The notes beneath the pieces were generated by a model. The model searched no databases, was not told the DNA's origin, and saw only the letters and a program-made list of their open reading frames with translations. A DNA stretch of 64,000 nucleotides, taken from IMG/VR virus record IMGVR_UViG_3300037042_002125, positions 62,001-126,000 of that record. The stretch is one strand, 5' to 3'. Positions 34,597-50,730 of this stretch are shown here, piece after piece. A program made the position numbers and the translations under genes. The first letter of the stretch is position 1, and each line of letters opens with the position of its first letter.

Positions 34597-34699
34597 ATCA
34601 AAGTTAAAAAGGGGGCCTTCAGGATTTACACAACTGGGTATACTGTCTATAATAAGTACGTCACGTTGTGTAATATCTTTCTACCTTATATTTACAGTT

Positions 34700-35000
34700 C
34701 AAAAGAAAGAATAAAAAGAGTAAAAAGCTGAAAGGGCGCGAAGCGCATCTTTCGCTATCGCTTTCGATCTACGTAGCGAAGCGGAGTAGATCAAGACATA
34801 CTTAGGACCGCGACTTCACCTTTCTACTGGTTAAGGTGATTCTAATCAAACTCGATCTAATCGACTAATCTGATGCTCGGGTCACGTCGCGTACTAAGGT
34901 TACTCTGAGCACCGCTTCGCTTCGCTACGCCGGCGCTCGACTAGTCTAAAGATTCGCTATCGCTCATCTTTATTTTTACTTACCCTTACTCTTTTTTTAA
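34700..35000. other. candidate replication origin (palindromic multi-hairpin region at the strand switch)
   Basis: GCGAAGCG/CGCTTCGC and TTCGCTATCGCT repeats in hairpins, A-rich left and T-rich right flanks, next to helicase-like gene. Confidence 0.5.
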
Positions 35001-35066
35001 TAGACTGAAAAGACATAACACACTGTAAATTCAAGTAACAAAATCAAGTCAGTAAGGCCCCCTAGA

Positions 35067-35546
35067 ATGTCCTACCCTAAATTAGCTTTAACCGAGATTG
35101 ATTTCTCGATCATCTTACCGATCTGGGAGACCCAGCTTTGGCTTGGTCGACAGACGAAAATAGAAAGTCATAGTGCGACTTTGTTAGGTAGAGATCCTTC
35201 TATGACTAATTTCAGTCTGCCAGCTTGGTACTATGGAATGTACTCTATTCCAAGTATTGCTAATCAAACAAAGTTAGTCGGAGTAAACTCAGTCCACCTT
35301 TGTGCTGACGGTTCAGCCCGTATCAGGGGATTCTGGGTCGACGAGGATTACCGTCGAAAAGGGATTGGGTTGTCCTTGTTGACAAGCACCTTGGACAGAG
35401 CAAAGGAAAGTAAGGCCGGCTGGGTATGGGCTTACCCTAGAAAAACATCTTGGCCTCTGTTTGAGAAGTTAGGTTTCAGGCTGGTCACACCTTGGTCTGA
35501 ATCAGAAACTAGTCCAGCTAATGCTTACTGCATTTTGCAATTTTAG
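35067..35546 (+). CDS. GNAT acetyltransferase
   Basis: WVDEDYRRKGIG motif A; FEKLGF. Confidence 0.88.
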   Translation: MSYPKLALTEIDFSIILPIWETQLWLGRQTKIESHSATLLGRDPSMTNFSLPAWYYGMYSIPSIANQTKLVGVNSVHLCADGSARIRGFWVDEDYRRKGIGLSLLTSTLDRAKESKAGWVWAYPRKTSWPLFEKLGFRLVTPWSESETSPANAYCILQF

Positions 35547-35560
35547 AAATAGGAATAACA

Positions 35561-36580
35561 ATGATAGTCAAAGGCACTTTTAGTAGGTTGAACAGGTTCA
35601 ACGTCCAGTGGCAGATAGGAAACTTCTGCAACTACAAATGTTCATACTGCGAGCCTAAATTCAGAGATGGGACCAACCCATTCCTTCCAATCGAACTAGC
35701 CAAGACAGTGATACGTAATGTTGTATCCAAGGTACCAGAACGAAACGCAATCTTCAATTACCAAGGCGGTGAGCCAACTGCTTACAGGGATTTTGAAGAG
35801 CTACTTAGCTTCACGTTCGATATAGGTGCTGGTTCCCTTATGGTGTCCAACGCATCTCGTTCTGTGGCGTACCTACGGCGCATTGCTCCTTATCTGAGCT
35901 ACTCTTACTTGACCTTCCATTCGGACATGGTGGATATAGACAGGTTCTTAGAACGCCTCCACGTATTCCACCCATCCCGAGTCCTTGTGTACTTGCCAAT
36001 GAATCCCAAATTATGGGACAAGTGTGTTGATGCCCATAGGCGCATTACAGATGCAAACTACCGTGTGGTGGCGAAAGTTATCTTCGATGACTATGGTGGA
36101 GGTAACTTGAACAATAGCATAGCCTACACCAAAGAGCAAAAAGCATTTATCGATGATGGGAATAAGAACTTGCTTGTACCCAAACCTGCTAATGACAAAC
36201 AAGGGCCAATGCCTTTCCAACTTAATCCAAAAGGCGAAATGGACTTTAGCGTTGATGTCAGGGCTATCCAAATCTTCGACCAAGGCCAAGTCAAGCTAAC
36301 CACGTCCCAGAACCTGGTCGTGACAAAACAGAACAACTACGTTGGCTTCGAGTGCTTCGGTGGGCTGGAAGAACTGTGCATCACTTCTAAAGGCAAGGTC
36401 TACACCACCGTGTGTATGCAGGACAAAGCAATAGCAGACATTTTCAAGGACCCTAACTTTGACCTGCCAACCAAACCCATGATCTGCAGACGCACCAACT
36501 GCTGGTGTGAAGCAGACTTGCTGCTAACAAAAATTTCCCCAGACGAGCCACAATTCTCTACACCTACACTTGCCAAATAA
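35561..36580 (+). CDS. radical SAM protein with SPASM/twitch-like C-terminus
   Basis: CNYKCSYC, GGEPT, C-terminal ECFGG...C...C.CWC. Confidence 0.92.
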   Translation: MIVKGTFSRLNRFNVQWQIGNFCNYKCSYCEPKFRDGTNPFLPIELAKTVIRNVVSKVPERNAIFNYQGGEPTAYRDFEELLSFTFDIGAGSLMVSNASRSVAYLRRIAPYLSYSYLTFHSDMVDIDRFLERLHVFHPSRVLVYLPMNPKLWDKCVDAHRRITDANYRVVAKVIFDDYGGGNLNNSIAYTKEQKAFIDDGNKNLLVPKPANDKQGPMPFQLNPKGEMDFSVDVRAIQIFDQGQVKLTTSQNLVVTKQNNYVGFECFGGLEELCITSKGKVYTTVCMQDKAIADIFKDPNFDLPTKPMICRRTNCWCEADLLLTKISPDEPQFSTPTLAK

Positions 36581-36584
36581 TCAT

Positions 36585-38144
36585 ATGCAACAATTCGATG
36601 TAAACGTTTTGATATTCACAGACTGCTCTGGGACCATATTTTCTAGAGCAGCAGGAGCCTACCGAATAGCAACAGAGCTCCGCAACAATGGGTACACTGT
36701 TCAAGTGGTCGACCACTTTTTGCTTGCAGGGTTACAAACCACTTTAGACCTTGTAGACAAATTTGTTGGGCCCTCGACTTTGTTTGTTGGGTTCTCAACC
36801 ACGTTTATGAACCCTGGGGAAATGCACCTCAAAGAGGCGGTTAAAGACACTAGCACAGTGTTCAAAGTAAACGGAGTTAAGACGAATCAGATCACAGCAC
36901 CAGCTATGATCTCCGTGAACCTACCTCTGACACGAAGCGACCTGCAGGTAATTCGCGATCGCATCTTGTCCAAATCTCCTAACGCCAAGTTGGTAATGGG
37001 TGGGGCAAAGACAGAGTACCGGGCAAAAGATCAAGTCCAGATAGATACATACCTATCTGGGTATGCGGATACCTCAGTAGTTGAGTACGTTAAGTACCTT
37101 GATGGCAAGAACCCGTTCTTTCAATTCAAGACAACACCCGATGGTCGAATGTTGATCGACCACGATGTAATGGCTGCCAATTTTGATTTCAAACACTCAA
37201 CCATCGAGTACCAAGAATCAGATTTCATATCGCCCGGCGAAGTGCTGCCTATAGAGATATCTCGGGGTTGCATTTTCAAATGCAAATTTTGCGCGTTTGT
37301 CTTGACCGGCAAAAAGAGAACAGACCACCTTAAGGATAGGGAGGTTCTGTACTCTGAGCTAATGCGTAATTACGAAAAGTTTGGTACCACCAAGTACCTA
37401 TTCTCTGATGACACTTACAACGACAGCGTAGCCAAGCTTGAGTACTTTGCAGAGACCTTCCGCAAGCTACCATTCAAGATTGAGTACGCGGCTTACTTGC
37501 GGCATGACCTAATAGCTACGTTCCCAGAAATGGCTGACCTGCTAATGGAAAGTGGAATCAAGTCTGCTATCTTCGGCCTTGAGACATTGAACCACACTGC
37601 AGGAAAGATTGTTGGCAAAGGCATGGACCCCAAAAAGATAAAGGAGATGCTACTGTGGTTGCGTAACGAAAAAGGTTGGGCCAAGAATATCCTTATGACC
37701 TCTGGTTTCATGGTCGGGTTGCCAACAGAGTCCCAAGAGACTGTTATGTCCTGGGCAGAAGAACTCTGGGACCCAACCTACCCCCTAGATTCATTCATCT
37801 TCTCTCCACTGACAATTTACCCTGACACAAACCGAATAGGCAAATCAGAGTTTGAGAAGGAGTACGAGAAGTACGGGTACTGGTTCGACCTTGCTGTATC
37901 ATCTGGTTGGATCAACGAGCACTGGGACTACGACAAGGCAAAGGTCTTCGCAAACTGGCTTACCACTGAGACAAATCGGAAAGGGAGAAGCCGAATGTTA
38001 GGCTTCCCTGCCATGATGGCTCATAACTACGGAGCAACGTGGGAGCAGATACATACTATGAGAGCCAGAAAATTTCTCCCCAACATATTTGCAAGGACAC
38101 AGGTGATGGCAAATAATTACCACTCAAAACTCCTTGCCTTATGA
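36585..38144 (+). CDS. B12-binding-domain radical SAM protein
   Basis: EISRGCIFKCKFC, SDDTYN, FGLET, FMVGLP; N-terminal VGFSTTF/MGG B12-like domain. Confidence 0.9.
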   Translation: MQQFDVNVLIFTDCSGTIFSRAAGAYRIATELRNNGYTVQVVDHFLLAGLQTTLDLVDKFVGPSTLFVGFSTTFMNPGEMHLKEAVKDTSTVFKVNGVKTNQITAPAMISVNLPLTRSDLQVIRDRILSKSPNAKLVMGGAKTEYRAKDQVQIDTYLSGYADTSVVEYVKYLDGKNPFFQFKTTPDGRMLIDHDVMAANFDFKHSTIEYQESDFISPGEVLPIEISRGCIFKCKFCAFVLTGKKRTDHLKDREVLYSELMRNYEKFGTTKYLFSDDTYNDSVAKLEYFAETFRKLPFKIEYAAYLRHDLIATFPEMADLLMESGIKSAIFGLETLNHTAGKIVGKGMDPKKIKEMLLWLRNEKGWAKNILMTSGFMVGLPTESQETVMSWAEELWDPTYPLDSFIFSPLTIYPDTNRIGKSEFEKEYEKYGYWFDLAVSSGWINEHWDYDKAKVFANWLTTETNRKGRSRMLGFPAMMAHNYGATWEQIHTMRARKFLPNIFARTQVMANNYHSKLLAL

Positions 38145-38974
38145 ATATCAACTTCACTCCGTTCACAGTTGAGTACCCTAGGTTCTCTACGCCCATAAAG
38201 TCCTTTCGAGAAGAGGCTGTGCAGGCTGTTGACTTGGCGGTAAGCAAGAACAAAGAAAACTTGCCGGTGGTGATTATGATGAGCGGCGGCGTTGATAGCG
38301 AGATAGTTGCCCAAGCATTCCTAGATGCCCACAGCCCTTTCTTGGCAGTCATTGGCCGTTTGGTAATCAACACACCCAACCATGTTCAGTATCTAAATAC
38401 TCATGATATAAAGTACGCAGAGGCTTGGTGTCAAACAAATATGATTTCGGTTTTATACTGTGATATTGATGTTTACCAAGATGCAAACAAGCTCTGTAAA
38501 TATGCGTTGGATGCCCAAGGGTTTAGTCCTCAGTATGCTTGCCATATGATGATTATGAAGTGGTGCTCTGACAACAGAATGTTCTTTGTTGCTGGTAACG
38601 GCGAGATGGATTTTGTACTCTACGAGAACGAATACCATATGCTGGACGAGCAACGTGAGCATACGTTGGGAAATTTTTGCAATGCTTATACCCTAAGAGG
38701 AGTATGGCAGTTTTGGAAACAAGATGCGAGGTGCGCTGCTGCTTTCCTTGAGCTACCAACAGTAAAACATTTGATGAGGCAAAGAGCAGCAAGGCTCCTT
38801 ACTCACAAGTACGCCTGCTTCTCTGATGTGTATAAGATAGAAGCAAGACCTAAGTACACTGGCTTTGAGTACATTCAAGAATGGGATAGCATATTGAGGA
38901 CCCGTCTAAAGCTCGACCATGACAAATTCGATGAAAAAGTTTACACACCACTTAATATTTTTAGGAGCCGTTAG
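38141..38974 (+). CDS. PP-loop (adenine nucleotide alpha-hydrolase) family protein
   Basis: MSGGVDSE motif. Confidence 0.7.
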   Translation: MNINFTPFTVEYPRFSTPIKSFREEAVQAVDLAVSKNKENLPVVIMMSGGVDSEIVAQAFLDAHSPFLAVIGRLVINTPNHVQYLNTHDIKYAEAWCQTNMISVLYCDIDVYQDANKLCKYALDAQGFSPQYACHMMIMKWCSDNRMFFVAGNGEMDFVLYENEYHMLDEQREHTLGNFCNAYTLRGVWQFWKQDARCAAAFLELPTVKHLMRQRAARLLTHKYACFSDVYKIEARPKYTGFEYIQEWDSILRTRLKLDHDKFDEKVYTPLNIFRSR

Positions 38975-38976
38975 CA

Positions 38977-39855
38977 ATGTATTGGAATAACACCAACACC
39001 AACACGCTTGACATTTCCCAGGTTGGGGCGTATAAACATTTTCCCCATATGAGTCCAACAAACCTCGACGGGTACAACTGTGATCCACTTGGACCCACAC
39101 CTATCTTGTTCTTAGGTTCCTGTGACCTAGATGGGCCAATAAAAGATACAAACCAAAGCTGGGCACGTTTGCTTCATGCTGACCTTTCCTTAGATGCGAA
39201 GAAGGGGCAACCCTTACCGTACATCGCTATGGGAAAAATGACAGCCGGGTTCATGGCCTTTCCTAGGAGATTAAATACCTTCTGTGAGAAATTTGGACCA
39301 CCTAACAAATTGTTTGCAGTCATACCTAGGCCAGCCGCAGTAGAGATCCCACTTAGCACGGGGGAACTAGTCAGCGTATCAAACAGACATTCTTTTGCAG
39401 ATTTCCTCAAAAAGCACGGACGCATCTCTGATATAGACTACAACTCTCTTGCTAACGCGTCTAAGTTCTTCCAGACGCAACTTCATAATGAGACTTACCA
39501 GCTGTACCAATTTGAACAAAGTGCTTCTTTCTTGGCTTTGATATGCAAGCATTACAAGATTGATTTTCGTTGGACTATGAACCTTAGTGCATCTGCGATT
39601 GCCTACTACCAAATCTATTTTACTTTGTTCATGGCAAACTGTCCTTTCATGCTTGAAAATTTTATTGGTACAGCCATAGCATCTGATTTCAGTTTTGATG
39701 GGAGCATGGGAGATAAGAGTCAGCATCAAATAGCTGACCTATTTATTCAGACAAAAAATTCCCGAGGGTTTGACATGGAGGAGACAATCTCTCTGTTGAA
39801 CATAAACCTTAACCTTGCTAATAGCATCACACCCAAAGTTCACAGGGCTTTATAA
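38977..39855 (+). CDS. hypothetical protein, possible SGNH-like fold
   Basis: ILFLGSC near N-terminus; weak. Confidence 0.55.
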   Translation: MYWNNTNTNTLDISQVGAYKHFPHMSPTNLDGYNCDPLGPTPILFLGSCDLDGPIKDTNQSWARLLHADLSLDAKKGQPLPYIAMGKMTAGFMAFPRRLNTFCEKFGPPNKLFAVIPRPAAVEIPLSTGELVSVSNRHSFADFLKKHGRISDIDYNSLANASKFFQTQLHNETYQLYQFEQSASFLALICKHYKIDFRWTMNLSASAIAYYQIYFTLFMANCPFMLENFIGTAIASDFSFDGSMGDKSQHQIADLFIQTKNSRGFDMEETISLLNINLNLANSITPKVHRAL

Positions 39856-39856
39856 C

Positions 39857-40522
39857 ATGAACCTCACTAAATCATATCTTTTCCCGCCAGTCCAAAGCTT
39901 GTTGTTGAAGAATTTGAACAACCGGCCTTACCTGCACGGGACTGCCATCGTCAAAGGTGTACTTGACGCATTGTGGAGCCAAGTAAGCTATGACATTTGC
40001 GATTTTGAGATCAGCTTGAAGAAGAAGCTAATGTCAAATGCAACCCTGTTCATTAACCGCGCAGGAGAGCGCCACGGGTATGAACCTGAGAAAGAAGACA
40101 TAGTCGTATCTGGCACCTTCTCTTGCGAAGGTATACCTTACGAGTTCCAACTGACTCCTACTTTGATACCTTGTACTGACATACTGGTCGTTGATGAAAA
40201 GGCCTTGGCTGCCCGCATGTATGAAACTGATTCATCTTGGAGTATGGATGTCACTCCCGATGATGATATTCATATCTGCATCAACGAAGTGTCAAAGACA
40301 TCTAACCAATTGATGTTTGCTGTACAACCTGGTATTGTTATGTCACCAGATAAGCAAACATGGTTTGTTGGGTACAAACTTCCCTCTCTTAATTTCCTAT
40401 CTGAACCAGCAACTCAAGTAGGCGTATCAAAAGGGTACAGGATGTTGAGCCCTAACCGAATGATGCGTTGGATTTCTGTTAACCGCCAAATTGTTGGTGA
40501 GCGTATTTGCGTTTATGCCTAG
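39857..40522 (+). CDS. hypothetical protein, possible hotdog-fold enzyme
   Basis: NRPYLHGT motif; weak. Confidence 0.5.
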   Translation: MNLTKSYLFPPVQSLLLKNLNNRPYLHGTAIVKGVLDALWSQVSYDICDFEISLKKKLMSNATLFINRAGERHGYEPEKEDIVVSGTFSCEGIPYEFQLTPTLIPCTDILVVDEKALAARMYETDSSWSMDVTPDDDIHICINEVSKTSNQLMFAVQPGIVMSPDKQTWFVGYKLPSLNFLSEPATQVGVSKGYRMLSPNRMMRWISVNRQIVGERICVYA

Positions 40523-40530
40523 GATCAAAA

Positions 40531-41484
40531 ATGGTTCATGATAACTATTACCGGTGTTACTACAACAGCGACCCCAAACACGTTGTTAGGAAAGATATCC
40601 ATGATAGATGGGAGCAGCACTTTTCAAAGGACATCTTGGATGGTCGTCATGTGCTTACCTTCCAGCATGAGACTCACATAGCCTGTGGTTTCATTTTTGA
40701 CAAATTTAGGAAGTACACTAAGAAAGTAAACCTGTTCTTTAGTGGTGGCATGGACTCTGAATGTCTTTTACGAAGTTTTTGCTATCTCAAGATTCCAGTT
40801 AACCCAATTGTACTCGTACACGTTCATGAACCAAAGTCAAACGAGACACTTAACGCCTTTGCAGTATGTAAAGAGTTAGGCATAGTCCCTACTATATTCA
40901 AAGTTGACCTACCCACGTTGTACAACTCTGGCGTACTACATGATTTGGGACGAAAATATCAGACAGCAAGACTCGGTCAGCTTGAGCTTATCTACGTAAT
41001 GACTAAGCTGGCAATACCTTGCATCCTTGCCGACGATATTCAGATGGTGTACCAAAGCACAGGCGAAGACTTGTTGCACACAGACGCGCATGAAACAAAA
41101 TATCAGCAATGGTTGTATGAGGTGCGTGAGGACGAAGATGGTCTGTACAATCGCTACGAGTCTCTTACTGGCATACCAACGATAGCTGATTCTTTTAGGT
41201 ACACACCCCACCTATGGGCTGCCATGATTCTAGCTAAAGATATTAGATACCTTGTTACACATTCTGCAGGACGAGTATCTAGCTACTCAACGAAAAATAT
41301 AATGATGAGCAAAGAGTTTTCTGTACCAAACAGAGAAAAGACGAACGTGTTTTCTTTTGGTCCACACTTTGCTACAGCTAAAGCTCTCAGAGAAGACTTG
41401 GAGCAAGAACTATTCCCGTTCACAATAGCCAGGTTGCCCTATAAACAGTTACTAACAACATTGGGGATTAAATATGAAATGTAA
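40531..41484 (+). CDS. PP-loop family protein (paralog of 38141)
   Basis: FSGGMDSE motif. Confidence 0.7.
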   Translation: MVHDNYYRCYYNSDPKHVVRKDIHDRWEQHFSKDILDGRHVLTFQHETHIACGFIFDKFRKYTKKVNLFFSGGMDSECLLRSFCYLKIPVNPIVLVHVHEPKSNETLNAFAVCKELGIVPTIFKVDLPTLYNSGVLHDLGRKYQTARLGQLELIYVMTKLAIPCILADDIQMVYQSTGEDLLHTDAHETKYQQWLYEVREDEDGLYNRYESLTGIPTIADSFRYTPHLWAAMILAKDIRYLVTHSAGRVSSYSTKNIMMSKEFSVPNREKTNVFSFGPHFATAKALREDLEQELFPFTIARLPYKQLLTTLGIKYEM

Positions 41485-42034
41485 GGAACTATCTGGCGCT
41501 AATTATTTCGAGTACGACAGACTCGTAGCAGCAGCCAATATAAAAAACAATGGATACCCAAGACCTTCCCTACTGGCGTTAGAGAACTTTTATTTCAACG
41601 ATGAGGAGAAGATGCACAAGGTCTTTGGTGTCTATGATGACAACAACGTCTTGAACGCTTGCATCTTCATCCACTTCTCTGCTAATGCCCGCTACTGGAA
41701 ACTGGCGTATGTGGTCAAGCAACCGTTTGCGCCTTTCAACTGTCTTGCATTTGCATTTGATGAAGCTTTCAAATATGCGGAGAGTATAAAATATTATCAC
41801 GGATACGTTAAGCTCTTTGCTGGGGTTGATGCCCGTTGGGAGAACTGGCTAAGCAGACGATCTGAGATGTTCAGACGATACACTGTTGCAACAGAAGAAG
41901 TTATACCACCAAATAAGAAGTCCTCTTTCGGTATGTACTGGAATGAAATACAACTTGGTATCACGTACGCCCGCCCTGTGCTCGTAAAAATTTATAGCCT
42001 ACCTGATAACCTAAGGATATTTAGTTATGAGTGA
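41474..42034 (+). CDS. hypothetical protein, possible GNAT fold
   Basis: VFGVYDD...ACIFI strand pattern; weak. Confidence 0.55.
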   Translation: MKCKELSGANYFEYDRLVAAANIKNNGYPRPSLLALENFYFNDEEKMHKVFGVYDDNNVLNACIFIHFSANARYWKLAYVVKQPFAPFNCLAFAFDEAFKYAESIKYYHGYVKLFAGVDARWENWLSRRSEMFRRYTVATEEVIPPNKKSSFGMYWNEIQLGITYARPVLVKIYSLPDNLRIFSYE

Positions 42035-42485
42035 CACTCTCTTATCTACCGTAAAGGGGACAGGCGGTGCTCAGGATATGCAAGTAAGATATGCTAGCAG
42101 CATAAACGGGTGCCCTGCAATTGTCCTTTTTCTATCTGCCTACTCCGCGTTAATTGAAGCGAACAACACTCAACCCCTTCTTCTTACTACAAACAAGAGT
42201 GAAGTTATTTATGCGATAGTAAACAAGACTGTAGTTGGTGTGTTAATGTTTGTAGTTTACGCAGATACTTATAAAACAGTATTAGTCCAATTTGTTCACG
42301 TTACTCCTGACCATAGGGGAGCCAGAATTTTCCAACATATGTTCACTGCTCTAGAACAACGTGTTAAGGCTTTTGGGTGCAAAAAGATAACAGGTAACAT
42401 ACACATCAAGAACAAAGATATGCTAACGGCTATGACTAGGATTGGAGCATTTGCAACTTTTTATAAAGTAGAGAAGAACTTATGA
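42027..42485 (+). CDS. GNAT acetyltransferase
   Basis: HVTPDHRGARIF motif A; IHIKN. Confidence 0.8.
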   Translation: MSDTLLSTVKGTGGAQDMQVRYASSINGCPAIVLFLSAYSALIEANNTQPLLLTTNKSEVIYAIVNKTVVGVLMFVVYADTYKTVLVQFVHVTPDHRGARIFQHMFTALEQRVKAFGCKKITGNIHIKNKDMLTAMTRIGAFATFYKVEKNL

Positions 42486-42916
42486 CCAAAAGAAGGTCTA
42501 GTGTTCCGCCCAGTCCTTACTATGCGGCTATCCTAAAGTCTCTTGAGTATGTTGGTCCAATGACTATCAAAGAGATAGCAAGGTACTTAGACGTTCAGTT
42601 CCAAATGGTTTCACACCACTTGAGGGTCATGCGTAGTGAAGGAAAACCCATATACAAGGTTGATTGGGAGCTCAAAGAAATTAAAGGGCGTCGCAGCCCA
42701 ATTTATGGTTTAGGAACTAAAGATATTTGTGATGATGTTCCTGAGCCACCTCCCATATCGCGCCAAGAGCAGAAGCGGCGTTACTACGAGAAGACTAAAC
42801 TTCTAATCAATCTTAAGGCGTACGGTGAACGTTCTGGAATGAATAGGGTAAACAATATATTTGGCCTAACATCGAACACTGTAAATACAGATAGCAACAC
42901 AGAAAGCAAACTATGA
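42482..42916 (+). CDS. winged-helix DNA-binding protein
   Basis: GPMTIKEIARYL...VSHHLRVM. Confidence 0.75.
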   Translation: MTKRRSSVPPSPYYAAILKSLEYVGPMTIKEIARYLDVQFQMVSHHLRVMRSEGKPIYKVDWELKEIKGRRSPIYGLGTKDICDDVPEPPPISRQEQKRRYYEKTKLLINLKAYGERSGMNRVNNIFGLTSNTVNTDSNTESKL

Positions 42917-43526: not shown

Positions 43527-43798
43527 AGTACACAACCAAGCCTTCTATTGTTGAAGCTACTCAGTGGTTCAAGGATGGAGACCATCCCCTTGTACAAGGT
43601 GCTAATCCAAAGGCTTTATGCGGTTGCATCATGTTAGGTGGTCCAGGTAGTAGCCCTCATGTTCACGATAAAGGTACACAAATCGGAAGCACATTAGTTT
43701 TTGCTGGGGACTGGATAGTCACTGAAGGGGATATTGTATGTGTAATGTCGAACCAAAAATTTAGAGAAACGTACACAGAGCTAAAGGATCAGCCATGA
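43523..43798 (+). CDS. phage hypothetical protein (KP..VEA.QW...GDWIV...F.ETY)
   Basis: recognisable small phage protein pattern. Confidence 0.7.
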   Translation: MKYTTKPSIVEATQWFKDGDHPLVQGANPKALCGCIMLGGPGSSPHVHDKGTQIGSTLVFAGDWIVTEGDIVCVMSNQKFRETYTELKDQP

Positions 43799-44691
43799 AG
43801 ATTGCAATTACTGGGGCGTCAGGTTTCATTGGTCGTAACTGTCTCGATCACTGGCCTGACGCCTTATCATTTGATAAACGTATAACAACGCACCATATAA
43901 CTCACTGTCAAGATATGCTGTGGGGTGAAAATCAGATATACGACTTTGCTGGCGTTGACGCCGTTGTTCACTTGGCTAGTGAGACCTCTGTTCGTAGCGG
44001 ACTAAGTTGCAAAGAGCTCCTACGCATCAACGTAGGGTTGGCAATGAATGTATATGAATCCTGCGTAGAGCACAAAGTACCTTTGATGATAAACGCATCT
44101 TCTAGTTCTGTGTACGGCAATATCCCGCCACCGTTTAGTGAGGAGCAAGTTCCTCACCCTATGTCTAACTATTCTGTGTCTAAGCTTGCTGCCGAACATT
44201 GGTTAAATCTTGCAGCAGACCAGACAGAAGGTTCAGGTCCTTCGATAGTAAACCTTCGTCTGTTTAATGCCCTTGGATCTTACCAAAGGGAGAATATGTT
44301 TCCCTACATCATCTTGGATTGCTTACGCCTAGGTGTACCTGTGCCTCTCTTTAGTGAGATGTACAGGGCATGGACTCCTGTTGACTACATAGTGAAGTGC
44401 ATTGACATGTTGATCACAGAAGGTAATTATGCCAAGGGAGCGAGCTATACGTTCAACTATGGTAATAACACTCCTCTTACGCAGGTGCAATTTATTGCAA
44501 TTATGGCAGATAAACTAAACATAGATATTCCAACAGAAAAGGTTGCTGGGGGATCTAGGCTAGAGATGGCCATAACTTTACCCGATGTGCTGGCAATACG
44601 CAGGTTTATAGATCCGCCTTTACCTGGTGCAAAACAGATCGGAGATGCTATTGCTGATGTGTTTGCCTACTACAATTCAGATCGAGTGTGA
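43795..44691 (+). CDS. NAD-dependent epimerase/dehydratase (extended SDR)
   Basis: TGASGFIG, HLAS, ASSSSVYG, YSVSK. Confidence 0.92.
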   Translation: MKIAITGASGFIGRNCLDHWPDALSFDKRITTHHITHCQDMLWGENQIYDFAGVDAVVHLASETSVRSGLSCKELLRINVGLAMNVYESCVEHKVPLMINASSSSVYGNIPPPFSEEQVPHPMSNYSVSKLAAEHWLNLAADQTEGSGPSIVNLRLFNALGSYQRENMFPYIILDCLRLGVPVPLFSEMYRAWTPVDYIVKCIDMLITEGNYAKGASYTFNYGNNTPLTQVQFIAIMADKLNIDIPTEKVAGGSRLEMAITLPDVLAIRRFIDPPLPGAKQIGDAIADVFAYYNSDRV

Positions 44692-44756: not shown

Positions 44757-45650
44757 ATGAAACACATGGACCCGAATCCTAAATCGGCCCATAAGAAGAT
44801 TGCCTTTACTGGAACCAATTCCAGCGGCAAGACTACTATGGCTATGGAAGTATGCTCAAGACTTAAACGTGATCACCACGTCCTAGCTGAGCTTGTATCT
44901 TCTCAAGACCGAAAGATCACTTGGAAGGACGATCACTTCCCTGTCGACCCACGTGCCCACTACGGCATGATCACAAATCTCATCCACGCAGAGGTCCAAG
45001 CAGAGCTCAAAGGTGATGCTGATGTTGTCATCACTGATCTCTCTGTTCTGGACCTTTATGCGATCGCCCTTACTGACCACCCCGATAGCCAAATGATAAA
45101 GGCGTTGGGTGTTGCAGTTGATGCTTGGGCCAAAACCTACACTCGAATCTTTTACCTGTCGCCTTTGGCATATCAAGAAGACGGCAAGCGGCCACTTGAC
45201 GAGTTCCGCATGATGACTCACGCTACTCTCATGCAACTGATCGGCACAGGCAATTACCCAAACGTTATCACAATTGACCGGCCAGAAATCTTCAAGACGA
45301 TTCTGGGTTTGTTGCGTATATCTGTAAAGAACGATGTGTTTGCTGAGTACGAGAAGTGGCAACTCCTTGCCGACACTTTCAAGATAACTTTGATAGTTAA
45401 GGAGAGGAATAGCAGCACATCTGATCAAGACGTTTGGTACAGCTACGAAAATAATAATCGTGGCACCCTCTCTGCGTATATTTCAGAAGCAAGCAACATT
45501 AAAGCTTTTGCGAAGCTTCTGTTTGGCGATCAATTTAAGATCGACCTCATGTTCGCCCCACCTGTGCCTTGGCATAAGGTTCCATTTGTTGCTGTAAAGT
45601 ACATGCCTACTGGACCTGACACTGCATTGACACATGAGGACGCACAATGA
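44757..45650 (+). CDS. P-loop nucleotide kinase (AAA_28/NadR-like) with extra C-terminal domain
   Basis: GTNSSGKTT, TDLSVLD, EDGKR. Confidence 0.8.
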   Translation: MKHMDPNPKSAHKKIAFTGTNSSGKTTMAMEVCSRLKRDHHVLAELVSSQDRKITWKDDHFPVDPRAHYGMITNLIHAEVQAELKGDADVVITDLSVLDLYAIALTDHPDSQMIKALGVAVDAWAKTYTRIFYLSPLAYQEDGKRPLDEFRMMTHATLMQLIGTGNYPNVITIDRPEIFKTILGLLRISVKNDVFAEYEKWQLLADTFKITLIVKERNSSTSDQDVWYSYENNNRGTLSAYISEASNIKAFAKLLFGDQFKIDLMFAPPVPWHKVPFVAVKYMPTGPDTALTHEDAQ

Positions 45651-46234
45651 TAACACCACGACAAGAAGCTACTGTCAAGGCGCAAAAGCTTAGCCTGTTC
45701 GAACTATCGTGTGCCGCGTTCAAGATCGACATGCTTGAACGCGTAGCCTTAGAACGCCTTGCAACACTACCTAACGAGATATTGCCTATTGGTGGGCTGT
45801 ACGTTGGCACAAGTGGCGGAAAAGATTCTGTAGCAGTTCATCATTTGATGAGTAAGACTGATCTGACTTGGTCAGTTCTCCATACAAACAAACCAGAGGA
45901 TGTTCATCCTTTAACAAAAGACTTCCTGTACCGCAGGCAGTATCCTATTCTGTATGTACCTAAGGGTGCGGCCATGCCTGCACATTTGCGAACTCAGTTC
46001 GATGGGTCAAGGGCATCTGAGTACAATAGGGCAGATGGCCGTTCCACTGATTTCATTGTAGGCGGAGTATCTGTGTCAAGGGATAAGATGCCTCTGTATG
46101 TTACCAACGGGTTGTTTGGCCTAAACTTTGTGTTTCCTATGTACGACTGGTCAGATGAAGAAGTGTGGGCGTATATATTCGGGAACGACATTGAGTACAG
46201 CGACGAATATCTCATTCCAAAGGATGCAGCATGA
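45647..46234 (+). CDS. PAPS reductase-family (PP-loop) protein
   Basis: SGGKDS, GSRASE, PMYDWSDEEVWAYI. Confidence 0.85.
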   Translation: MITPRQEATVKAQKLSLFELSCAAFKIDMLERVALERLATLPNEILPIGGLYVGTSGGKDSVAVHHLMSKTDLTWSVLHTNKPEDVHPLTKDFLYRRQYPILYVPKGAAMPAHLRTQFDGSRASEYNRADGRSTDFIVGGVSVSRDKMPLYVTNGLFGLNFVFPMYDWSDEEVWAYIFGNDIEYSDEYLIPKDAA

Positions 46235-46902
46235 AGACACTGATCCTTGCACCGCACGTTGATGACGAACTTATTGGCTGTTATCAAGTTCTTGAAGATT
46301 ACAGGCATGGTCCAAAAGAAAATGATTTGGATGTCATATGGCTCTACGAGACAACTGAGGAACGACTAACAGAAGGTCATCGCCTTGCAGAGTACTTTGG
46401 GTTTACTGGTGCTGCTGTGTTTAGTGCCCAGGTTCCTGAGCTTATATACCGAGGTAAGTACGACAAGATCTACGTACCAGCACGTCAGGATTGGCACATA
46501 GATCACAAGATGACCAACCAGCTGTTCAGAGAATTCGCTACTAACTTCTACTCTGTAGATATGGTTATGGGCGTTCCCTTGTCTGAGAAGGCTAGCAATA
46601 ACAAGAGAGTGCTGTTAGACACATTCTACCCAAGTCAAGCAAAGCTATGGGAGTACGATGCAAAGTATTACCTGTTTACTGCCGTCTACGAGACAGATAT
46701 CCACAGCTACGTCCGGAGACGCTACGGGTTCTTCTCAATAACCGCACCAGCCAACTACGTTGAAGAAATCAATTCGATCGTCTTACAAAACATGGACGAC
46801 TTCAACAAGTGCCAAGTCAAAGCGTTCAACAAATTGGTTAGCGTATGCCTATCTGGTGAGCTACGGTTTGATCACATCAACGGTTGCATTTTTAAGATCT
46901 AA
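46231..46902 (+). CDS. PIG-L/LmbE-family deacetylase
   Basis: APHVDDE and HIDH motifs. Confidence 0.85.
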   Translation: MKTLILAPHVDDELIGCYQVLEDYRHGPKENDLDVIWLYETTEERLTEGHRLAEYFGFTGAAVFSAQVPELIYRGKYDKIYVPARQDWHIDHKMTNQLFREFATNFYSVDMVMGVPLSEKASNNKRVLLDTFYPSQAKLWEYDAKYYLFTAVYETDIHSYVRRRYGFFSITAPANYVEEINSIVLQNMDDFNKCQVKAFNKLVSVCLSGELRFDHINGCIFKI

Positions 46903-46916
46903 AAGAGGAACACATC

Positions 46917-47432
46917 ATGAAACTTGGATTTGAAGTAGAAGGTCGTTTGTCAGGCCTATACACTCTGTTTATGGACGCCAAAGAGGCTATGGAATTTTTC
47001 AACTACAAGTCTCTAAAGGATAGGTCGACTCCGAAAAGCGCAGTAGCAAGTGTTGAACGGGTTCAACAAATCTACGTAAGTGACCACGCCAACGACATAC
47101 AACCTTATGCCGACTGCCTAAAAAAGTGGTACGAATTAGGTCTACCTGTAACACTAGAGAGAACTGAGATATATAACAGAGACAGTTACTCCAAAAATGT
47201 AACCATCATGTTAACTATAACAGACACTGGTTCGCTTTTCAACGATAGTTTCTGGAATTTGTACGATACAGACCAAGTAAAGTTTAGCAGAACTACGTTT
47301 GACGGTAGTAACACAGTGCGGTGTATTACTGTTGGTAACATGATGCTAACGCAACCACAAGCCTTTGCTGACGATATAACGTTAAAAGTATCAACTGATA
47401 AGAAGTTCCTACTGCCAGGGTTACAAAAATGA
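46917..47432 (+). CDS. hypothetical protein
   Basis: 171-aa ORF with GAGG RBS. Confidence 0.7.
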   Translation: MKLGFEVEGRLSGLYTLFMDAKEAMEFFNYKSLKDRSTPKSAVASVERVQQIYVSDHANDIQPYADCLKKWYELGLPVTLERTEIYNRDSYSKNVTIMLTITDTGSLFNDSFWNLYDTDQVKFSRTTFDGSNTVRCITVGNMMLTQPQAFADDITLKVSTDKKFLLPGLQK

Positions 47433-48544
47433 ATACCAAAAAACAATTAGTGCTAGTCCCTCTTGAGCCGTTGTTTGAGCGGTACACAGAGTCCTGGTAC
47501 AGGAATATACCGCCTCTGTTTACCAAGCACGGCTTCGATGTGACGGTCATAGACGGTGTGACGTTGGAAGATGAAGTGAAGGTCGGAACCTTCTTGGACA
47601 TCAACAGCACAACCCATTACAAGTTTACTCAGCTACAAAAGATCAGCAAGATGTTTCATCAGCGGCAGATCAAAGATGGGTGCGTATTCTTTTTCTCCGA
47701 CACAGAGTTTTGGGGACTTGAGAGCGTACGGCTGTTGGCGCAAATGAATAACGTCAAGGTGTTCATAACTTCGTTCCTGCACGCCGCGTCCTACACAAAA
47801 GAAGACGCGTTCAGCGTTGCAGCCTATTACCAAAAATATACAGAGGTTGGTTGGATAGCCTGCAGTGATCTAGTATTTGTCGGTAGCCAGTACCACAAGC
47901 AGCAGGTCATAAGAGAACGTCTGCGTCCGTACGGGGCAAAGAACTTGGAAAGCAACTTGTATGTCAGTAAGAACCCTCTGTTCCTATCCGACTACCCAAG
48001 GGCCAATAACACAAATCTGTTGGCAGGCAAACAGAAAAAAGTTTTACTTACCAACAGGTTCGATACTGAAAAGCGGCCCAACGAAACCCTTGAGATGTTT
48101 GCCATACTTAAGCTAAGGTATCCAGATTGGGAGTTCGTTGTGACCACTGGCAGGTCAACCTTCCGAGGAACTGAGAGCGTGGTGTATGCCCGTAAGCTCG
48201 AGGCTGAGGGTGTGATCACTATAAAGGCAGGCTTGACAAAAGATCAGTACCACAAAGAGCTTGAAGAAGCAGCGATCATGGTAACTCATAGTATTGAGGA
48301 AAACTACGGTTATTGTCTTGCAGAAGCTTTGATCCACAAATGCCATGTGGTTGCCCGTAAAGGCTTATCTCACGATGAGTTCTTGCCCATGCAATTCTTG
48401 TTTGATAATGAGAAGGTTAGGGACTTTGACGTAACGTCCGATCTCATGGCTACGTTCAATACCTCTGACTGGCCTACTGTAAATGAAGTAGACACTAACG
48501 GAGCAGAGAACATTGCTCGAAGTCTAGAGAGGTTGGTTTTATGA
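47429..48544 (+). CDS. GT-B (GT4-like) glycosyltransferase
   Basis: RFDTEKR and EENYGYCLAEA (E-x7-E). Confidence 0.85.
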   Translation: MNTKKQLVLVPLEPLFERYTESWYRNIPPLFTKHGFDVTVIDGVTLEDEVKVGTFLDINSTTHYKFTQLQKISKMFHQRQIKDGCVFFFSDTEFWGLESVRLLAQMNNVKVFITSFLHAASYTKEDAFSVAAYYQKYTEVGWIACSDLVFVGSQYHKQQVIRERLRPYGAKNLESNLYVSKNPLFLSDYPRANNTNLLAGKQKKVLLTNRFDTEKRPNETLEMFAILKLRYPDWEFVVTTGRSTFRGTESVVYARKLEAEGVITIKAGLTKDQYHKELEEAAIMVTHSIEENYGYCLAEALIHKCHVVARKGLSHDEFLPMQFLFDNEKVRDFDVTSDLMATFNTSDWPTVNEVDTNGAENIARSLERLVL

Positions 48545-50224: not shown

Positions 50225-50653
50225 ATGACAACCATTAACACAGACAAAGAAACTCTAGTGATCTCTACACCTAGGCTTAGTAGGCTCAGCAGTCAAAAGA
50301 CAACCATATGGGTAAAGTTTACTCGACCTGGTATTCACTGCTACCTTAAGGCTCCAGATGAAGTGAAGTATCTTAGAGATCCTCACCGTCACAGTTTCCA
50401 TTTCAAAGTTGGCATCCAGGTTCATCACGATGACCGTGAAATCGAATTCCATATGTTCTTGAATTGGGTTACCGGCCTGTACGACAAGTCTATGCTCATG
50501 TTGGATTACAAATCTTGCGAAATGATTGCCGCAGAATTAGTTGGAGCAATTGCTTCTAAATACGATTGCAGTAATCGTTCAATCGAAGTAGAAGTTTCTG
50601 AGGATGGAGAATGTGGAGCCTGTGTCTACGACAATCCAGTTGGTATCTACTAA
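50225..50653 (+). CDS. QueD/PTPS-like T-fold protein
   Basis: GIHCY, HRHSFHF, SCEMIA, VEVSEDGE. Confidence 0.78.
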   Translation: MTTINTDKETLVISTPRLSRLSSQKTTIWVKFTRPGIHCYLKAPDEVKYLRDPHRHSFHFKVGIQVHHDDREIEFHMFLNWVTGLYDKSMLMLDYKSCEMIAAELVGAIASKYDCSNRSIEVEVSEDGECGACVYDNPVGIY

Positions 50654-50691: not shown

Positions 50692-50730
50692 GGCCGTTGC
50701 CTGGTAATTCTGGGCAACGGCCTTTCCTTT
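50692..50730 (+). terminator. intrinsic terminator
   Basis: GGCCGTTGCC/GGCAACGGCC stem then TTTCCTTT. Confidence 0.7.

What the first reader, a model, noticed from the sequence alone, without database searches (positions are those of the whole stretch)
35067..42485. Biosynthetic-looking island: two radical SAMs, two PP-loop paralogs, two to three GNATs
Seen: nine contiguous genes behind one promoter motif: GNAT, SPASM-like rSAM, B12-rSAM, SGGxDSE protein, SGNH-like, hotdog-like, second SGGxDSE protein, GNAT-like, GNAT. Known: these families methylate, adenylate/amidate and acylate peptides, nucleosides and lipids. No precursor peptide is evident. Inference: an uncharacterised pathway decorating virion proteins, glycans, DNA or tRNA, or making a small molecule.
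Basis: partly seen in the sequence, partly recalled or inferred. Interest (0 to 1): 0.65.

Follow-up and report, generated by a model that had tools for sequence, protein, structure and literature searches.

The report
Jumbo-phage deazaguanine DNA tailoring island
Nine co-transcribed enzyme genes in a freshwater jumbo phage look like an undescribed tailoring module, most likely decorating a 7-deazaguanine base that the phage puts into its own DNA, though the substrate has not been shown.

Summary
Nine tightly packed + strand genes lie at 35067-42485: a GNAT, a small radical SAM enzyme, a cobalamin-type radical SAM enzyme, two PP-loop paralogs, an SGNH-fold protein, an unclassified 221-235 aa protein, a GNAT-fold protein and a second GNAT. 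The catalytic motifs are intact.

A core (GNAT, B12-rSAM, PPa, SGNH-like protein with partner, PPb, GNAT-fold protein) is co-conserved in at least four other viral lineages.

The island is not self-contained. One strong promoter (34625-34653) and one strong terminator (50692-50722) bracket it together with a second block: SDR, P-loop protein, PAPS-reductase-like protein, PIG-L, GT1, a TGT/DpdA-superfamily protein and a conserved unknown. Elsewhere the phage encodes FolE, QueD and QueE, but no QueC. It can therefore make 7-carboxy-7-deazaguanine (CDG).

PPa folds like the asparagine synthetase/beta-lactam synthetase adenylating domain. PPa homologs, B12-rSAMs and SGNH-like DUF6071 proteins sit inside 7-deazaguanine clusters of several other jumbo-phage lineages.

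Best reading (about 0.5): a tailoring module of a new 7-deazaguanine DNA hypermodification, with the CDG carboxylate as the amide handle.

The substrate is inferred, not shown. Sugar or virion glycan, peptide and lipid readings remain open.

The parts
34625..34653 (+). Sigma-70-like promoter, TTTACA-17-TATAAT, in the divergent intergenic region
   Evidence: Best promoter match in 34.4-51 kb, 11 of 12 positions. This is a consensus match only.
35067..35546 (+). g01, a GNAT N-acyltransferase with the RRKGIG CoA-binding motif
   Evidence: PF00583 2.5e-10. Co-conserved at 47-53% identity at the head of the module in L003/L004, L005/L006, L007 and L114.
35561..36580 (+). g02, a small radical SAM enzyme (CNYKCSYC) with a Cys-rich C-terminus
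   Evidence: PF04055 2.4e-8; viperin-like N-terminus 3e-9; STM4011-family C-terminus. It is not part of the conserved core, but relatives occur in 5 of 42 B12-rSAM locus groups.
36570..38144 (+). g03, a cobalamin-type (class B) radical SAM enzyme and presumed C-methylase (CIFKCKFC). The start is probably ATG 36585.
   Evidence: PF04055 1.9e-13. The best NCBIfam hits are all B12-rSAM families. There are 322 relatives in IMG/VR. It is present in 1-2 copies in the conserved module.
38141..38974 (+). g04 (PPa), a stand-alone Asn-synthetase-like PP-loop adenylating enzyme (SGGVDSE)
   Evidence: AF2 pLDDT 94. Foldseek best hits are AsnS, beta-lactam synthetase and carbapenam synthetase. 44 homologs, all unnamed. 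A homolog sits inside 7-deazaguanine clusters (hhalign 97.7%).
38977..39855 (+). g05, an SGNH/GDSL-fold protein with an invariant G-S-C49-D50 block I
   Evidence: AF2 pLDDT 91. Foldseek hits are Est2A, CgnD, PatB and TesA. The nearest named Atlas cluster is DUF6071.
39815..40522 (+). g06, an unclassified protein that is always paired with g05-family genes in relatives. The start is probably ATG 39857.
   Evidence: BLAST family with the 193-aa genes of L003 (two copies) and L007. No Pfam, PHROG or NCBIfam hit.
40507..41484 (+). g07 (PPb), a second PP-loop paralog (SGGMDSE). The start is probably ATG 40531.
   Evidence: Same BLAST family as PPa. 44-48% identical orthologs in L003, L005 and L007. 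hhalign to the PPa profile spans 213 columns.
41474..42034 (+). g08, a GNAT-fold protein without the canonical CoA loop, possibly an aminoacyl or acyl transferase
   Evidence: Atlas structure search finds GNAT clusters at TM 0.61-0.67. By features, the nearest clusters are the MprF C-terminal LPG_synthase_C family at 0.91. It always follows PPb in relatives.
42027..42485 (+). g09, a GNAT N-acyltransferase
   Evidence: PF00583 1.2e-6. Not in the conserved core; weak relatives occur in 4 locus groups.
42482..42916 (+). g10, an ArsR-type winged-helix protein
   Evidence: PF01022 6.2e-7. Conserved only in the near-identical relative L108.
43795..44691 (+). g13, an SDR nucleotide-sugar epimerase/dehydratase
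   Evidence: PF01370 2.1e-25; phrog_540.
44757..45650 (+). g14, a P-loop AAA_28 / nucleotide-kinase-like protein
   Evidence: PF13521 2.7e-7; phrog_2107.
45647..46234 (+). g15, a PAPS-reductase-like PP-loop protein (SGGKDS)
   Evidence: PF01507 1.2e-8. Conserved with the DpdA-like block in L109.
46231..46902 (+). g16, a PIG-L/LmbE-type de-N-acetylase
   Evidence: PF02585 5.1e-5, below the gathering score. Conserved in L109.
47429..48544 (+). g18, a GT1-family glycosyltransferase
   Evidence: PF00534 2.8e-7. GT1 genes recur beside DpdA-like genes in G004, L129, L137, L145, L169, L173 and L174.
48541..49848 (+). g19, a TGT/DpdA-superfamily transglycosylase (DSGGFQ; CGCPVC...H)
   Evidence: phrog_887 5e-4. 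Atlas features point to TGT and DpdA clusters. The top ~40 PDB hits of profile A6 are all TGT, aligned in register. hhalign to phage Motura's annotated TGT gives 97.9%, E 6e-13.
50225..50653 (+). g21, a phrog_17812 family protein and conserved partner of DpdA-like genes. It is not QueD.
   Evidence: phrog_17812 7e-25. It lies next to a DpdA-like gene in more than 10 loci. A genuine PTPS/QueD exists elsewhere in the genome.
50692..50722 (+). Intrinsic-terminator-like hairpin (13-bp stem, 9 G-C pairs)
   Evidence: The only strong + strand terminator-like site in 34.4-51 kb.

Best explanation
The nine genes are the tailoring half of a roughly 15.6-kb late-type operon (35067-50653). Through this operon a freshwater jumbo myovirus hypermodifies guanine positions of its own DNA.

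Shown:
- The phage encodes FolE, QueD (PTPS) and QueE. This is the complete route from GTP to 7-carboxy-7-deazaguanine (CDG).
- It has no QueC.
- It has a TGT/DpdA-superfamily base-exchange enzyme in the same transcription unit as the island.

Inferred:
- The DpdA-like enzyme puts CDG, or a derivative of it, into DNA.
- The two stand-alone Asn-synthetase-like PP-loop enzymes (PPa, PPb) adenylate a carboxylate. The candidates are the C7 carboxylate of CDG and then the carboxylate of whatever was added. Each is joined to an amine to form an amide. CmoY does this on 5-carboxymethylcytosine DNA, and QueC-family enzymes do it on CDG.
- The GNAT-fold g08 and the GNATs g01 and g09 add aminoacyl or acyl groups to free amines.
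- The cobalamin radical SAM enzyme C-methylates an unactivated carbon of the appendage.
- The SGNH-fold Cys variant g05, with its partner g06, transfers or removes an ester or thioester-linked group.
- The downstream SDR, PIG-L and GT1 enzymes may supply or attach an amino sugar whose free amine is another amide acceptor.

The expected result is a bulky major-groove adduct that shields the DNA from restriction and other DNA-targeting defences.
For: 1. One unit. The best promoter match lies at 34625-34653, and the only strong + strand terminator lies at 50692-50722. All genes between them are co-oriented and mostly overlapping.

2. CDG pathway. FolE scores 3e-63 and 5e-86. QueE scores 1e-18 against QueE families. 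PTPS scores 8e-24. Nothing was found for QueC, CmoA or a C5-methyltransferase.

3. g19 belongs to the TGT/DpdA superfamily.

4. PPa has the AsnS/beta-lactam synthetase adenylating fold.

5. Core module co-conservation. GNAT, B12-rSAM, PPa, g06/g05, PPb and g08 occur together in G001, G002/G003, G004 and L114. These phages are otherwise very different: only 43 of 269 of the window phage's genes hit G004.

6. The genomes that hold the core module and are large enough to judge also hold the CDG genes. G004 has FolE, QueE at 57% identity and a DSGGF protein. G002 has FolE and QueE at 60% identity.

7. A QueC-like 200-aa gene abuts the module in G002, lies near it in G001 and G004, and occurs in 7 of 42 B12-rSAM locus groups.

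8. At least six other jumbo-phage lineages share a single cluster. It reads DpdA-like, phrog_17812, GT1, SDR, DegT, FolE, PPa-homolog, QueD, B12-rSAM, methyltransferase, QueE, DUF6071. The PP-loop gene of that cluster is homologous to PPa (97.7%, E 2.5e-12). The nearest named structural cluster of g05 is DUF6071.

9. Precedents from the literature. CmoY is a 271-aa Asn-synthetase-like phage enzyme that ligates glycine to a carboxylated DNA base (PMC12783734). QueC-family enzymes conjugate CDG to amines (PMC13279940 abstract). A GNAT and a radical SAM enzyme act on DNA-borne appendages (PMC8989533). Every phage known to carry 7-deazaguanine DNA encodes a DpdA (PMC10516641). Phage Motura has the operon QueC, AsnB, TGT, QueE, FolE.
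Against: - No enzyme of the island has been tied to DNA directly, and no DNA-binding domain was detected.
- PPa and PPb resemble CmoY only at the PP-loop.
- In G004 the module lies 140 kb from the DpdA-like cluster, so adjacency is not conserved.
- G014 is 94% complete and holds a B12-rSAM and a distant PP-loop gene, but no QueE or phrog_17812 gene.
- More distant B12-rSAM islands are dominated by fatty-acid desaturase- and hydroxylase-like genes. The best NCBIfam neighbour of g03 is a lipid B12-rSAM. The nearest feature clusters of g08 are lipid aminoacyl transferases. All three point towards lipid-like substrates.
- The B12-rSAM of the L129-type clusters is only 21% identical to g03.
- Co-occurrence rests on few independent complete genomes.
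- The island sits at the head of the structural-gene strand, which would also suit virion decoration.
Confidence: 0.5

Rival explanations
1. The island, together with the SDR, PIG-L and GT1 genes, builds an unusual acylated, amidated and C-methylated amino sugar. The sugar is used to glycosylate virion proteins, or to glycosylate DNA independently of 7-deazaguanine. In this reading the PP-loop enzymes act as sugar amidotransferases or uronate amidases, and the GNATs as sugar N-acetyltransferases.
For: SDR, PIG-L and GT1 lie in the same unit. In L129-type clusters, SDR plus a DegT aminotransferase plus GT1 accompany the PP-loop and B12-rSAM genes. The block immediately precedes the structural genes, with the tail sheath at 56858. 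From my own knowledge: PP-loop sugar amidotransferases (WbpG/PseA type), GNAT sugar acetyltransferases and B12-rSAM sugar C-methylases (GenK type) are known.
Against: The core module travels without any sugar gene in G001, G002 and G004. In G004 the GT1 and SDR genes cluster with the DpdA-like gene and QueE, not with the module. The sugar genes themselves are embedded in 7-deazaguanine clusters, so this rival may be part of the main explanation rather than an alternative to it.
Confidence: 0.17
2. This is a RiPP-like or protein-modifying pathway. The Asn-synthetase-like enzymes would form lactam or isopeptide bonds, as lasso cyclases do. The B12-rSAM would methylate side chains, as in polytheonamide or bottromycin biosynthesis. 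The GNATs would cap an N-terminus. The target would be a phage peptide or a structural protein.
For: The enzyme set is typical of RiPP clusters. CgnD, a crocagin RiPP protein, is among the fold matches of g05. An Asp/Asn-hydroxylase-like gene occurs in 8 of 42 related locus groups and near the module in G001.
Against: There is no precursor-sized ORF or free gap inside the island. No small ORF family is conserved across the homologous modules and the window. No RiPP recognition element, leader peptidase or transporter was found. PPa, at 277 aa, lacks the N-terminal domain of lasso cyclases.
Confidence: 0.1
3. The island makes or remodels a lipid or another small molecule, for example an amino-acylated or methylated lipid or a 7-deazapurine natural product. 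Such a product would change the host envelope or metabolism during infection.
For: The best NCBIfam neighbour of g03 is a lipid-biosynthesis B12-rSAM, followed by the hopanoid enzyme HpnJ. Fatty-acid desaturase-like genes are the commonest neighbours of the B12-rSAM family in viral contigs, in 19 of 42 groups. Fatty-acid hydroxylase and LpxO-type hydroxylase families are also frequent. The feature neighbours of g08 are MprF C-terminal domains.
Against: None of those lipid-type genes is in the window's island or in its close relatives L003-L007. All scores to lipid families lie far below their cut-offs. The presence of a TGT-superfamily enzyme argues for base exchange in a nucleic acid rather than a free metabolite.
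Confidence: 0.1
4. The target is RNA. The TGT-like enzyme and the PP-loop enzymes would hypermodify host or phage tRNA, giving a queuosine- or archaeosine-like modification.
For: TGT, QueC-type PP-loop enzymes and radical SAM enzymes are classical tRNA-modification families. MnmA, TilS and TtuA are among the weaker fold and sequence matches of PPa.
Against: The phage encodes only one tRNA (Met) and a tmRNA. All phage-encoded FolE, QueD, QueE and DpdA sets studied so far modify DNA (PMC6884629, PMC10516641). PPa is structurally closer to AsnS and beta-lactam synthetase than to tRNA thiolases.
Confidence: 0.05

Closest known systems
Phage 7-deazaguanine DNA modification systems (FolE, QueD, QueE, QueC or Gat-QueC, DpdA; tailoring by DpdL, DpdM, DpdN; Hutinet 2019, Cui 2023)
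   Same: The phage has FolE, QueD and QueE plus a TGT/DpdA-superfamily gene. As in the Campylobacter and Cellulophaga phage cases, its pathway stops at CDG for lack of a QueC. The related phage Motura has the operon QueC, AsnB, TGT, QueE, FolE.
   Different: There is no QueC, QueF, ArcS, DpdL, DpdM or DpdN. Instead there are two Asn-synthetase-like PP-loop enzymes, a B12-rSAM, a second rSAM, three GNAT-fold proteins, an SGNH-fold protein and sugar enzymes. The DpdA-like protein gets no hit from the Pfam TGT model (genome search at E<=10) or from any Pfam-A model (protein scan at E<=1). It belongs to a large unnamed viral family of 1431 clusters.
CmoA/CmoX/CmoY system of Synechococcus phage S-B43 (5-carboxymethylcytosine as a handle, with glycine ligated by an Asn-synthetase-like enzyme)
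   Same: Both involve a stand-alone phage protein of about 270-280 aa with an Asn-synthetase-type PP-loop. Both follow the logic of a carboxyl handle on a DNA base, then adenylation, then an amide.
   Different: The genome has no CmoA or CmoX. Sequence similarity to CmoY is confined to the PP-loop. The handle proposed here is the C7 carboxylate of CDG, which is untested.
Thymidine hypermodification pathways (5-HMUDK, aGPT-Pplase, rSAM isomerase, PLP decarboxylase, GNAT; Lee 2018/2021)
   Same: Both are post-replicative, combinatorial tailoring of a DNA-borne appendage by a radical SAM enzyme and a GNAT. Both show mix-and-match gene sets across viral metagenomes.
   Different: The base, the handle and the enzyme families differ. 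The rSAM of that pathway is SPL-like, not cobalamin-dependent, and no aGPT-Pplase was found here.
Carbapenem/thienamycin-type and RiPP tailoring sets (beta-lactam synthetase or lasso cyclase, B12-rSAM methylases, GNAT)
   Same: The enzyme classes are the same. The best solved-structure matches of PPa include beta-lactam and carbapenam synthetases.
   Different: There is no scaffold-forming enzyme, no precursor peptide and no transporter. The context is a phage DNA-modification operon.

Membership tests
Radical SAM superfamily (g02, g03) | CX3CX2C cluster motif and a Pfam PF04055 match above the gathering score | tested here: met
   g02 has CNYKCSYC and scores 34.7 bits against a cut-off of 29.5. 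g03 has CIFKCKFC and scores 51.4 bits.
Cobalamin-dependent (class B) radical SAM enzymes (g03) | An N-terminal B12-binding Rossmann domain ahead of the rSAM core | tested here: inconclusive
   All the best NCBIfam hits are class B families, with alignments that start at residues 92-153, but all are far below their cut-offs. PF02310 is not detected in g03 itself. It appears only as 'faint' in a 56% identical ortholog. The protein was not folded.
SPASM/twitch radical SAM enzymes (g02) | The C-terminal CX9-15GX4C...CX2CX5CX3C...C motif | tested here: not met
   The last 75 residues hold six Cys arranged as CX8C, C and CX4CXC. This is not the canonical spacing. The only C-terminal family match is STM4011 at 2.4e-5.
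PP-loop ATP pyrophosphatases, Asn-synthetase-like branch (PPa, PPb) | An SGGxDS loop and the AsnS C-domain fold | tested here: met
   The loops are SGGVDSE and SGGMDSE. The best solved matches of the PPa model are AsnS, beta-lactam synthetase and carbapenam synthetase (probability 1.0, TMq about 0.5). PPb was tested only by homology to PPa.
CmoY amide ligases | Sequence homology beyond the PP-loop, and association with CmoA and CmoX | tested here: not met
   hhalign aligns 35 columns at 41% probability. The genome has no CmoA or C5-methyltransferase.
QueC (PF06508) | A Pfam match and the C-terminal Cys4 zinc site | tested here: not met
   PF06508 has no match in the genome at E<=10. PPa and PPb lack the CxxCxxC tail that the 200-aa QueC-like genes of relatives carry.
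DpdA / TGT superfamily (g19) | The catalytic DSGGFQ Asp, a CxCxxC...H zinc site, and homology to known TGT or DpdA proteins | tested here: met
   Both motifs are present. Profile A6 aligns in register to TGT structures; these are its top ~40 PDB hits, each individually at E about 0.2-0.4. hhalign to Motura's annotated TGT gives 97.9%, E 6e-13. Activity on DNA was not tested, and the fold was not predicted.
SGNH/GDSL hydrolases (g05) | The fold, plus the block I GDS Ser nucleophile and the block V DxxH motif | tested here: inconclusive
   The fold is met. Block I reads G47-S-C49-D50 with C49 and D50 invariant, so the nucleophile may be Cys. Block V could not be assigned.
GNAT acyltransferases (g01, g09, g08) | The GNAT fold and the Q/RxxGxG/A CoA-pyrophosphate loop | tested here: met
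   This holds for g01 and g09. g08 is inconclusive: it has the GNAT fold by Atlas structure search (TM 0.61-0.67) but no recognisable CoA loop. Its MprF-like feature hits share only 159 of 256 features.
Hotdog fold (g06) | A five-stranded sheet wrapping a long helix | not tested
Only four family members were aligned.

The most novel reading that the evidence does not exclude
Jumbo phages use 7-carboxy-7-deazaguanine in DNA as a carboxyl handle and build an oligo-amide appendage on it. The appendage would be aminoacyl and/or aminoglycosyl, N-acylated and C-methylated. It would be made by iterating stand-alone Asn-synthetase-like ligases, with two paralogs here and up to seven in a relative. A cobalamin radical SAM enzyme would methylate it. 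That would be the first B12-rSAM acting on a DNA modification and the largest known family of guanine hypermodifications.
Probability: 0.3. Interest if true: 0.9.

Novelty: new variant of a known kind. Interest (0 to 1): 0.72.

Why it matters
Phage DNA hypermodifications decide the outcome of restriction, CRISPR and glycosylase-based defences. They have also supplied enzymes for DNA labelling and sequencing.

Known 7-deazaguanine derivatives in phage DNA are small: cyano, amido, aminomethyl, formyl, methyl and carboxy. This locus and its many metagenomic relatives suggest a much richer chemistry on the same scaffold, made by enzyme families that currently have no name. The PPa family, the roughly 520-aa DpdA-like family with 1431 clusters, phrog_17812 and DUF6071 are all unannotated.

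The hypothesis can be tested directly with five to fifteen genes in E. coli and LC-MS/MS. If the substrate turns out not to be DNA, the widely conserved viral module of B12-rSAM, PP-loop and GNAT genes is still an uncharacterised pathway carried by hundreds of environmental jumbo phages.

Tried and rejected
- DNA and protein BLAST of the island, the B12-rSAM and PPa against 50,697 GenBank phage records found nothing. No isolated phage in that collection carries this module.
- Pfam TGT and QueC models found nothing in the genome.
- The 5-carboxymethylcytosine handle was rejected, because the genome has no CmoA and no C5-methyltransferase.
- I first took g21 (phrog_17812) for QueD. This is rejected. 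A bona fide PTPS lies at genome position 187106-187648, and L129-type clusters carry both genes. The g21-family profile finds nothing in the PDB.
- A narrow DpdA-like profile (A2) also failed against the PDB. Only the 58-sequence profile A6 reached TGT.
- The big representative search and a cluster look-up returned no names for the DpdA-like family.
- hhalign found no sequence relation between g05 and the DUF6071 protein of L129. The link between them is structural only.
- A riboswitch or other known RNA in the 470-nt leader was rejected, because Rfam gave no hit.
- A group I intron in the QueD region was rejected, because only a sub-threshold tRNA-like hit appeared.
- No RNA-seq run holds the locus.

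Full report
**What the window is.** The 64-kb window is bases 62001-126000 of a 222-kb IMG/VR viral record that is about 93% complete. It is a jumbo myovirus. Its tail sheath is 44-46% identical to those of Ralstonia phage phiRSL1, Burkholderia phage BcepSauron and Achromobacter phage Motura. It also encodes type II topoisomerase subunits, one tRNA-Met and a tmRNA. Near-identical DNA occurs in lake-water and sediment metagenomes from at least seven studies, so it is a real and recurrent freshwater phage.

**The observation.** Nine co-oriented ORFs fill 35067-42485 with overlaps or gaps of no more than 15 nt.
- g01 and g09 are GNATs.
- g02 and g03 are radical SAM enzymes with intact CX3CX2C motifs.
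- The nearest curated families of g03 are all cobalamin-dependent class B enzymes, though far below their cut-offs.
- g02 has a viperin/MoaA-like N-terminus. Its Cys-rich tail does not fit the SPASM spacing.
- g04 (PPa) and g07 (PPb) carry SGGVDSE and SGGMDSE loops and are paralogs.
- A high-confidence model of PPa (pLDDT 94) best matches the adenylating C-domains of asparagine synthetase, beta-lactam synthetase and carbapenam synthetase. NAD synthetase, MnmA, TtuA and LarE rank below these.
- g05 folds with pLDDT 91 as an SGNH/GDSL-type protein. Its block I reads G-S-C-D with Cys49 and Asp50 invariant.
- g08 has a GNAT fold without a recognisable CoA loop. A language-model search puts it nearest the aminoacyl-tRNA-dependent MprF C-terminal domain, which is a lead only.
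- g06 stays unclassified. The 'hotdog' idea was not testable.

**Co-conservation.** The B12-rSAM has 322 relatives in IMG/VR. In four other lineages the order is GNAT, B12-rSAM (one or two copies), PPa, g06-like plus g05-like, PPb, g08, at 30-56% identity. These lineages are G001/L004, G002/G003, the complete 365-kb G004, and L114 in part. G004 shares only 43 of the window phage's 269 predicted genes, so the module moves as a unit between very different phages. One relative carries seven PP-loop paralogs. g02, g09 and the ArsR-type g10 are not part of the core.

**The boundary is wider than reported.**
- The best promoter match lies at 34625-34653, and the only strong + strand terminator-like hairpin lies at 50692-50722.
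- Between them, after the island, come an SDR sugar epimerase/dehydratase, a P-loop protein, a PAPS-reductase-like PP-loop protein, a PIG-L deacetylase, an unknown, a GT1 glycosyltransferase, g19, an unknown and g21.
- This second block is conserved in a diverged relative at 42-80% identity (L109).
- g19 carries DSGGFQ and CGCPVC...H motifs. It gets a weak PHROG hit to queuine tRNA-ribosyltransferase. Its language-model neighbours are TGT and DpdA clusters.
- A 58-sequence profile of the g19 family finds only tRNA-guanine transglycosylases as its top ~40 PDB hits. These align in register at the catalytic and substrate motifs, although each is individually non-significant.
- That profile matches the annotated TGT of phage Motura at 97.9% probability (E 6e-13, 245 columns). 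The Motura gene sits in the operon QueC, AsnB, TGT, QueE, FolE.
- I therefore treat g19 as a DpdA-like base-exchange enzyme. DNA as its substrate is inferred from what is known of phage DpdA proteins (PMC6884629, PMC10516641).

**The base it could insert.**
- Outside the window the genome encodes FolE, QueE, a dUTPase and a genuine PTPS/QueD in a row.
- No QueC, CmoA or C5-methyltransferase is detectable.
- The phage can thus make 7-carboxy-7-deazaguanine but has no canonical way to go further.
- CDG bears a carboxylate, which is the chemical group that Asn-synthetase-like enzymes adenylate.

**Links between the island and the 7-deazaguanine genes.**
- (a) They share one transcription unit here.
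- (b) G004 and G002, the module-bearing records large enough to judge, also have FolE and QueE at 57-60% identity and a phrog_17812 gene. G004 has a DSGGF protein next to GT1, SDR and QueE.
- (c) A 200-aa QueC-like gene, with a PP-loop and a Cys4 tail, abuts the module in G002. It lies near the module in G001 and G004 and recurs in 7 of 42 B12-rSAM locus groups.
- (d) A profile search with PPa retrieved at least six further jumbo-phage lineages with a single operon. It reads DpdA-like, phrog_17812, GT1, SDR, DegT, FolE, a 278-aa PPa homolog (hhalign 97.7%, E 2.5e-12), QueD, a 660-aa B12-rSAM, a methyltransferase, QueE and a DUF6071 protein.
- (e) The nearest named structural cluster of g05 is DUF6071.
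- (f) None of these records has a full-length canonical QueC.

**Mechanistic model.** The shown parts are the gene content, the folds of PPa and g05, co-conservation, and the completeness of the CDG pathway. The inferred parts are these:
- DpdA-like exchange of G for CDG in DNA.
- Adenylation of the C7 carboxylate by PPa, or by PPb, and capture by an amine.
- A second ligation by the paralog.
- Acyl or aminoacyl transfer by g08, g01 and g09.
- C-methylation by g03.
- Ester or thioester chemistry by g05 and g06.
- An amino sugar, made by SDR, PIG-L and GT1, as a possible further building block.

Precedents:
- CmoY, a 271-aa Asn-synthetase-like phage enzyme, ligates glycine to 5-carboxymethylcytosine in DNA (PMC12783734).
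- QueC-family enzymes conjugate CDG to amines in CBASS (PMC13279940 abstract).
- A GNAT and a radical SAM enzyme act on thymidine appendages (PMC8989533).

**Membership.** PPa and PPb resemble CmoY only at the PP-loop, and they are not QueC.

**Reasons for caution.**
- No island protein is tied to DNA directly.
- Adjacency to the DpdA-like block is not conserved in G004.
- One near-complete genome with a distant B12-rSAM and PP-loop pair lacks QueE.
- The more distant B12-rSAM islands are packed with fatty-acid desaturase- and hydroxylase-like, Asp/Asn-hydroxylase-like and extra radical SAM genes. That pattern, together with the lipid-type nearest families of g03 and g08, keeps a lipid or small-molecule reading alive.
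- A sugar or virion-glycan reading and a RiPP or protein reading also fit parts of the data. The RiPP reading suffers from the absence of any precursor-sized gene.
- A tRNA target is unlikely.

**Novelty.** The literature searches found no paper that describes this module, the PPa family or the roughly 520-aa DpdA-like family. All homologs are unnamed metagenomic proteins. I rate it a new variant of a known kind, namely phage 7-deazaguanine DNA modification. My confidence in the DNA reading is about 0.5, and about 0.3 for the specific reading of an oligo-amide built on a CDG handle.

Noticed in passing
window 34605-35068: The 464-nt intergenic region between the divergent helicase gene and the island is a rod-like imperfect palindrome with five nested inverted repeats. 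As RNA it folds at -138.5 kcal/mol (z = -6.6). It has no Rfam match. The best promoter match sits in its 5' arm.
   Followed up: partly
window 50225-50653 (g21); also L129:4498-4950, L097:9849-10247 and others: The phrog_17812 family has invariant H..H-x-H, S-C-E and E-D-G-E motifs and lies next to DpdA-like genes in more than 10 jumbo-phage loci. It is not QueD. Its function is unknown.
   Followed up: partly
L129, L131, L137-L139, L145, L155, L157, L169, L173-L175, L177; G004 163-175 kb: A widespread jumbo-phage supercluster joins 7-deazaguanine genes to GT1, an SDR 4,6-dehydratase type enzyme, a DegT aminotransferase, a HIT-like protein, a PPa-like PP-loop enzyme, a B12-rSAM, a SAM methyltransferase and DUF6071. 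This hints at glycosylated or amino-sugar-linked deazaguanine.
   Followed up: partly
L020, L009, L048, L043, L046, L008, L012, L063, L072: More distant B12-rSAM islands in viral contigs hold 2-4 fatty-acid desaturase-like genes, fatty-acid hydroxylase and Asp/Asn-hydroxylase-like genes, 3-6 further radical SAM genes, QueC-like genes and PP-loop genes. They form very enzyme-rich islands of unknown purpose.
   Followed up: partly
L005 / L186 (G002 lineage): The homologous module carries seven PP-loop paralogs. It also has a pair of about 296-aa NMT1/TctC-like (periplasmic-binding-fold-like) proteins in place of the g05/g06 pair.
   Followed up: no
G000 genome 187711-188884 (locus L190:1712-2885): A 66-aa remnant of a QueD N-terminus (…CAFRQWRADSHCNLLHG, then a stop) lies beside a 326-aa DUF7487 ORF on the opposite strand. 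An intact PTPS/QueD lies 1 kb away.
   Followed up: partly
window 11765-11842 and 12330-12737: The phage encodes a tRNA-Met (CAT) and a tmRNA with the tag peptide ANDENFRMVA.
   Followed up: no
L191 (Achromobacter phage Motura, 17431-23200 of MN094788.1): An isolated relative has the compact operon QueC, asparagine synthetase B, TGT, hypothetical, QueE, hypothetical, GTP cyclohydrolase. This looks like a split version of Gat-QueC, and its DNA modification appears untested.
   Followed up: no
window 42916-43798: Small conserved ORFs lie between the ArsR-like gene and the SDR gene. One is a 72-aa Lys/Glu-rich protein and one a 91-aa phrog_419 protein. The near-identical relative L108 has about 1.2 kb extra at this point.
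   Followed up: no
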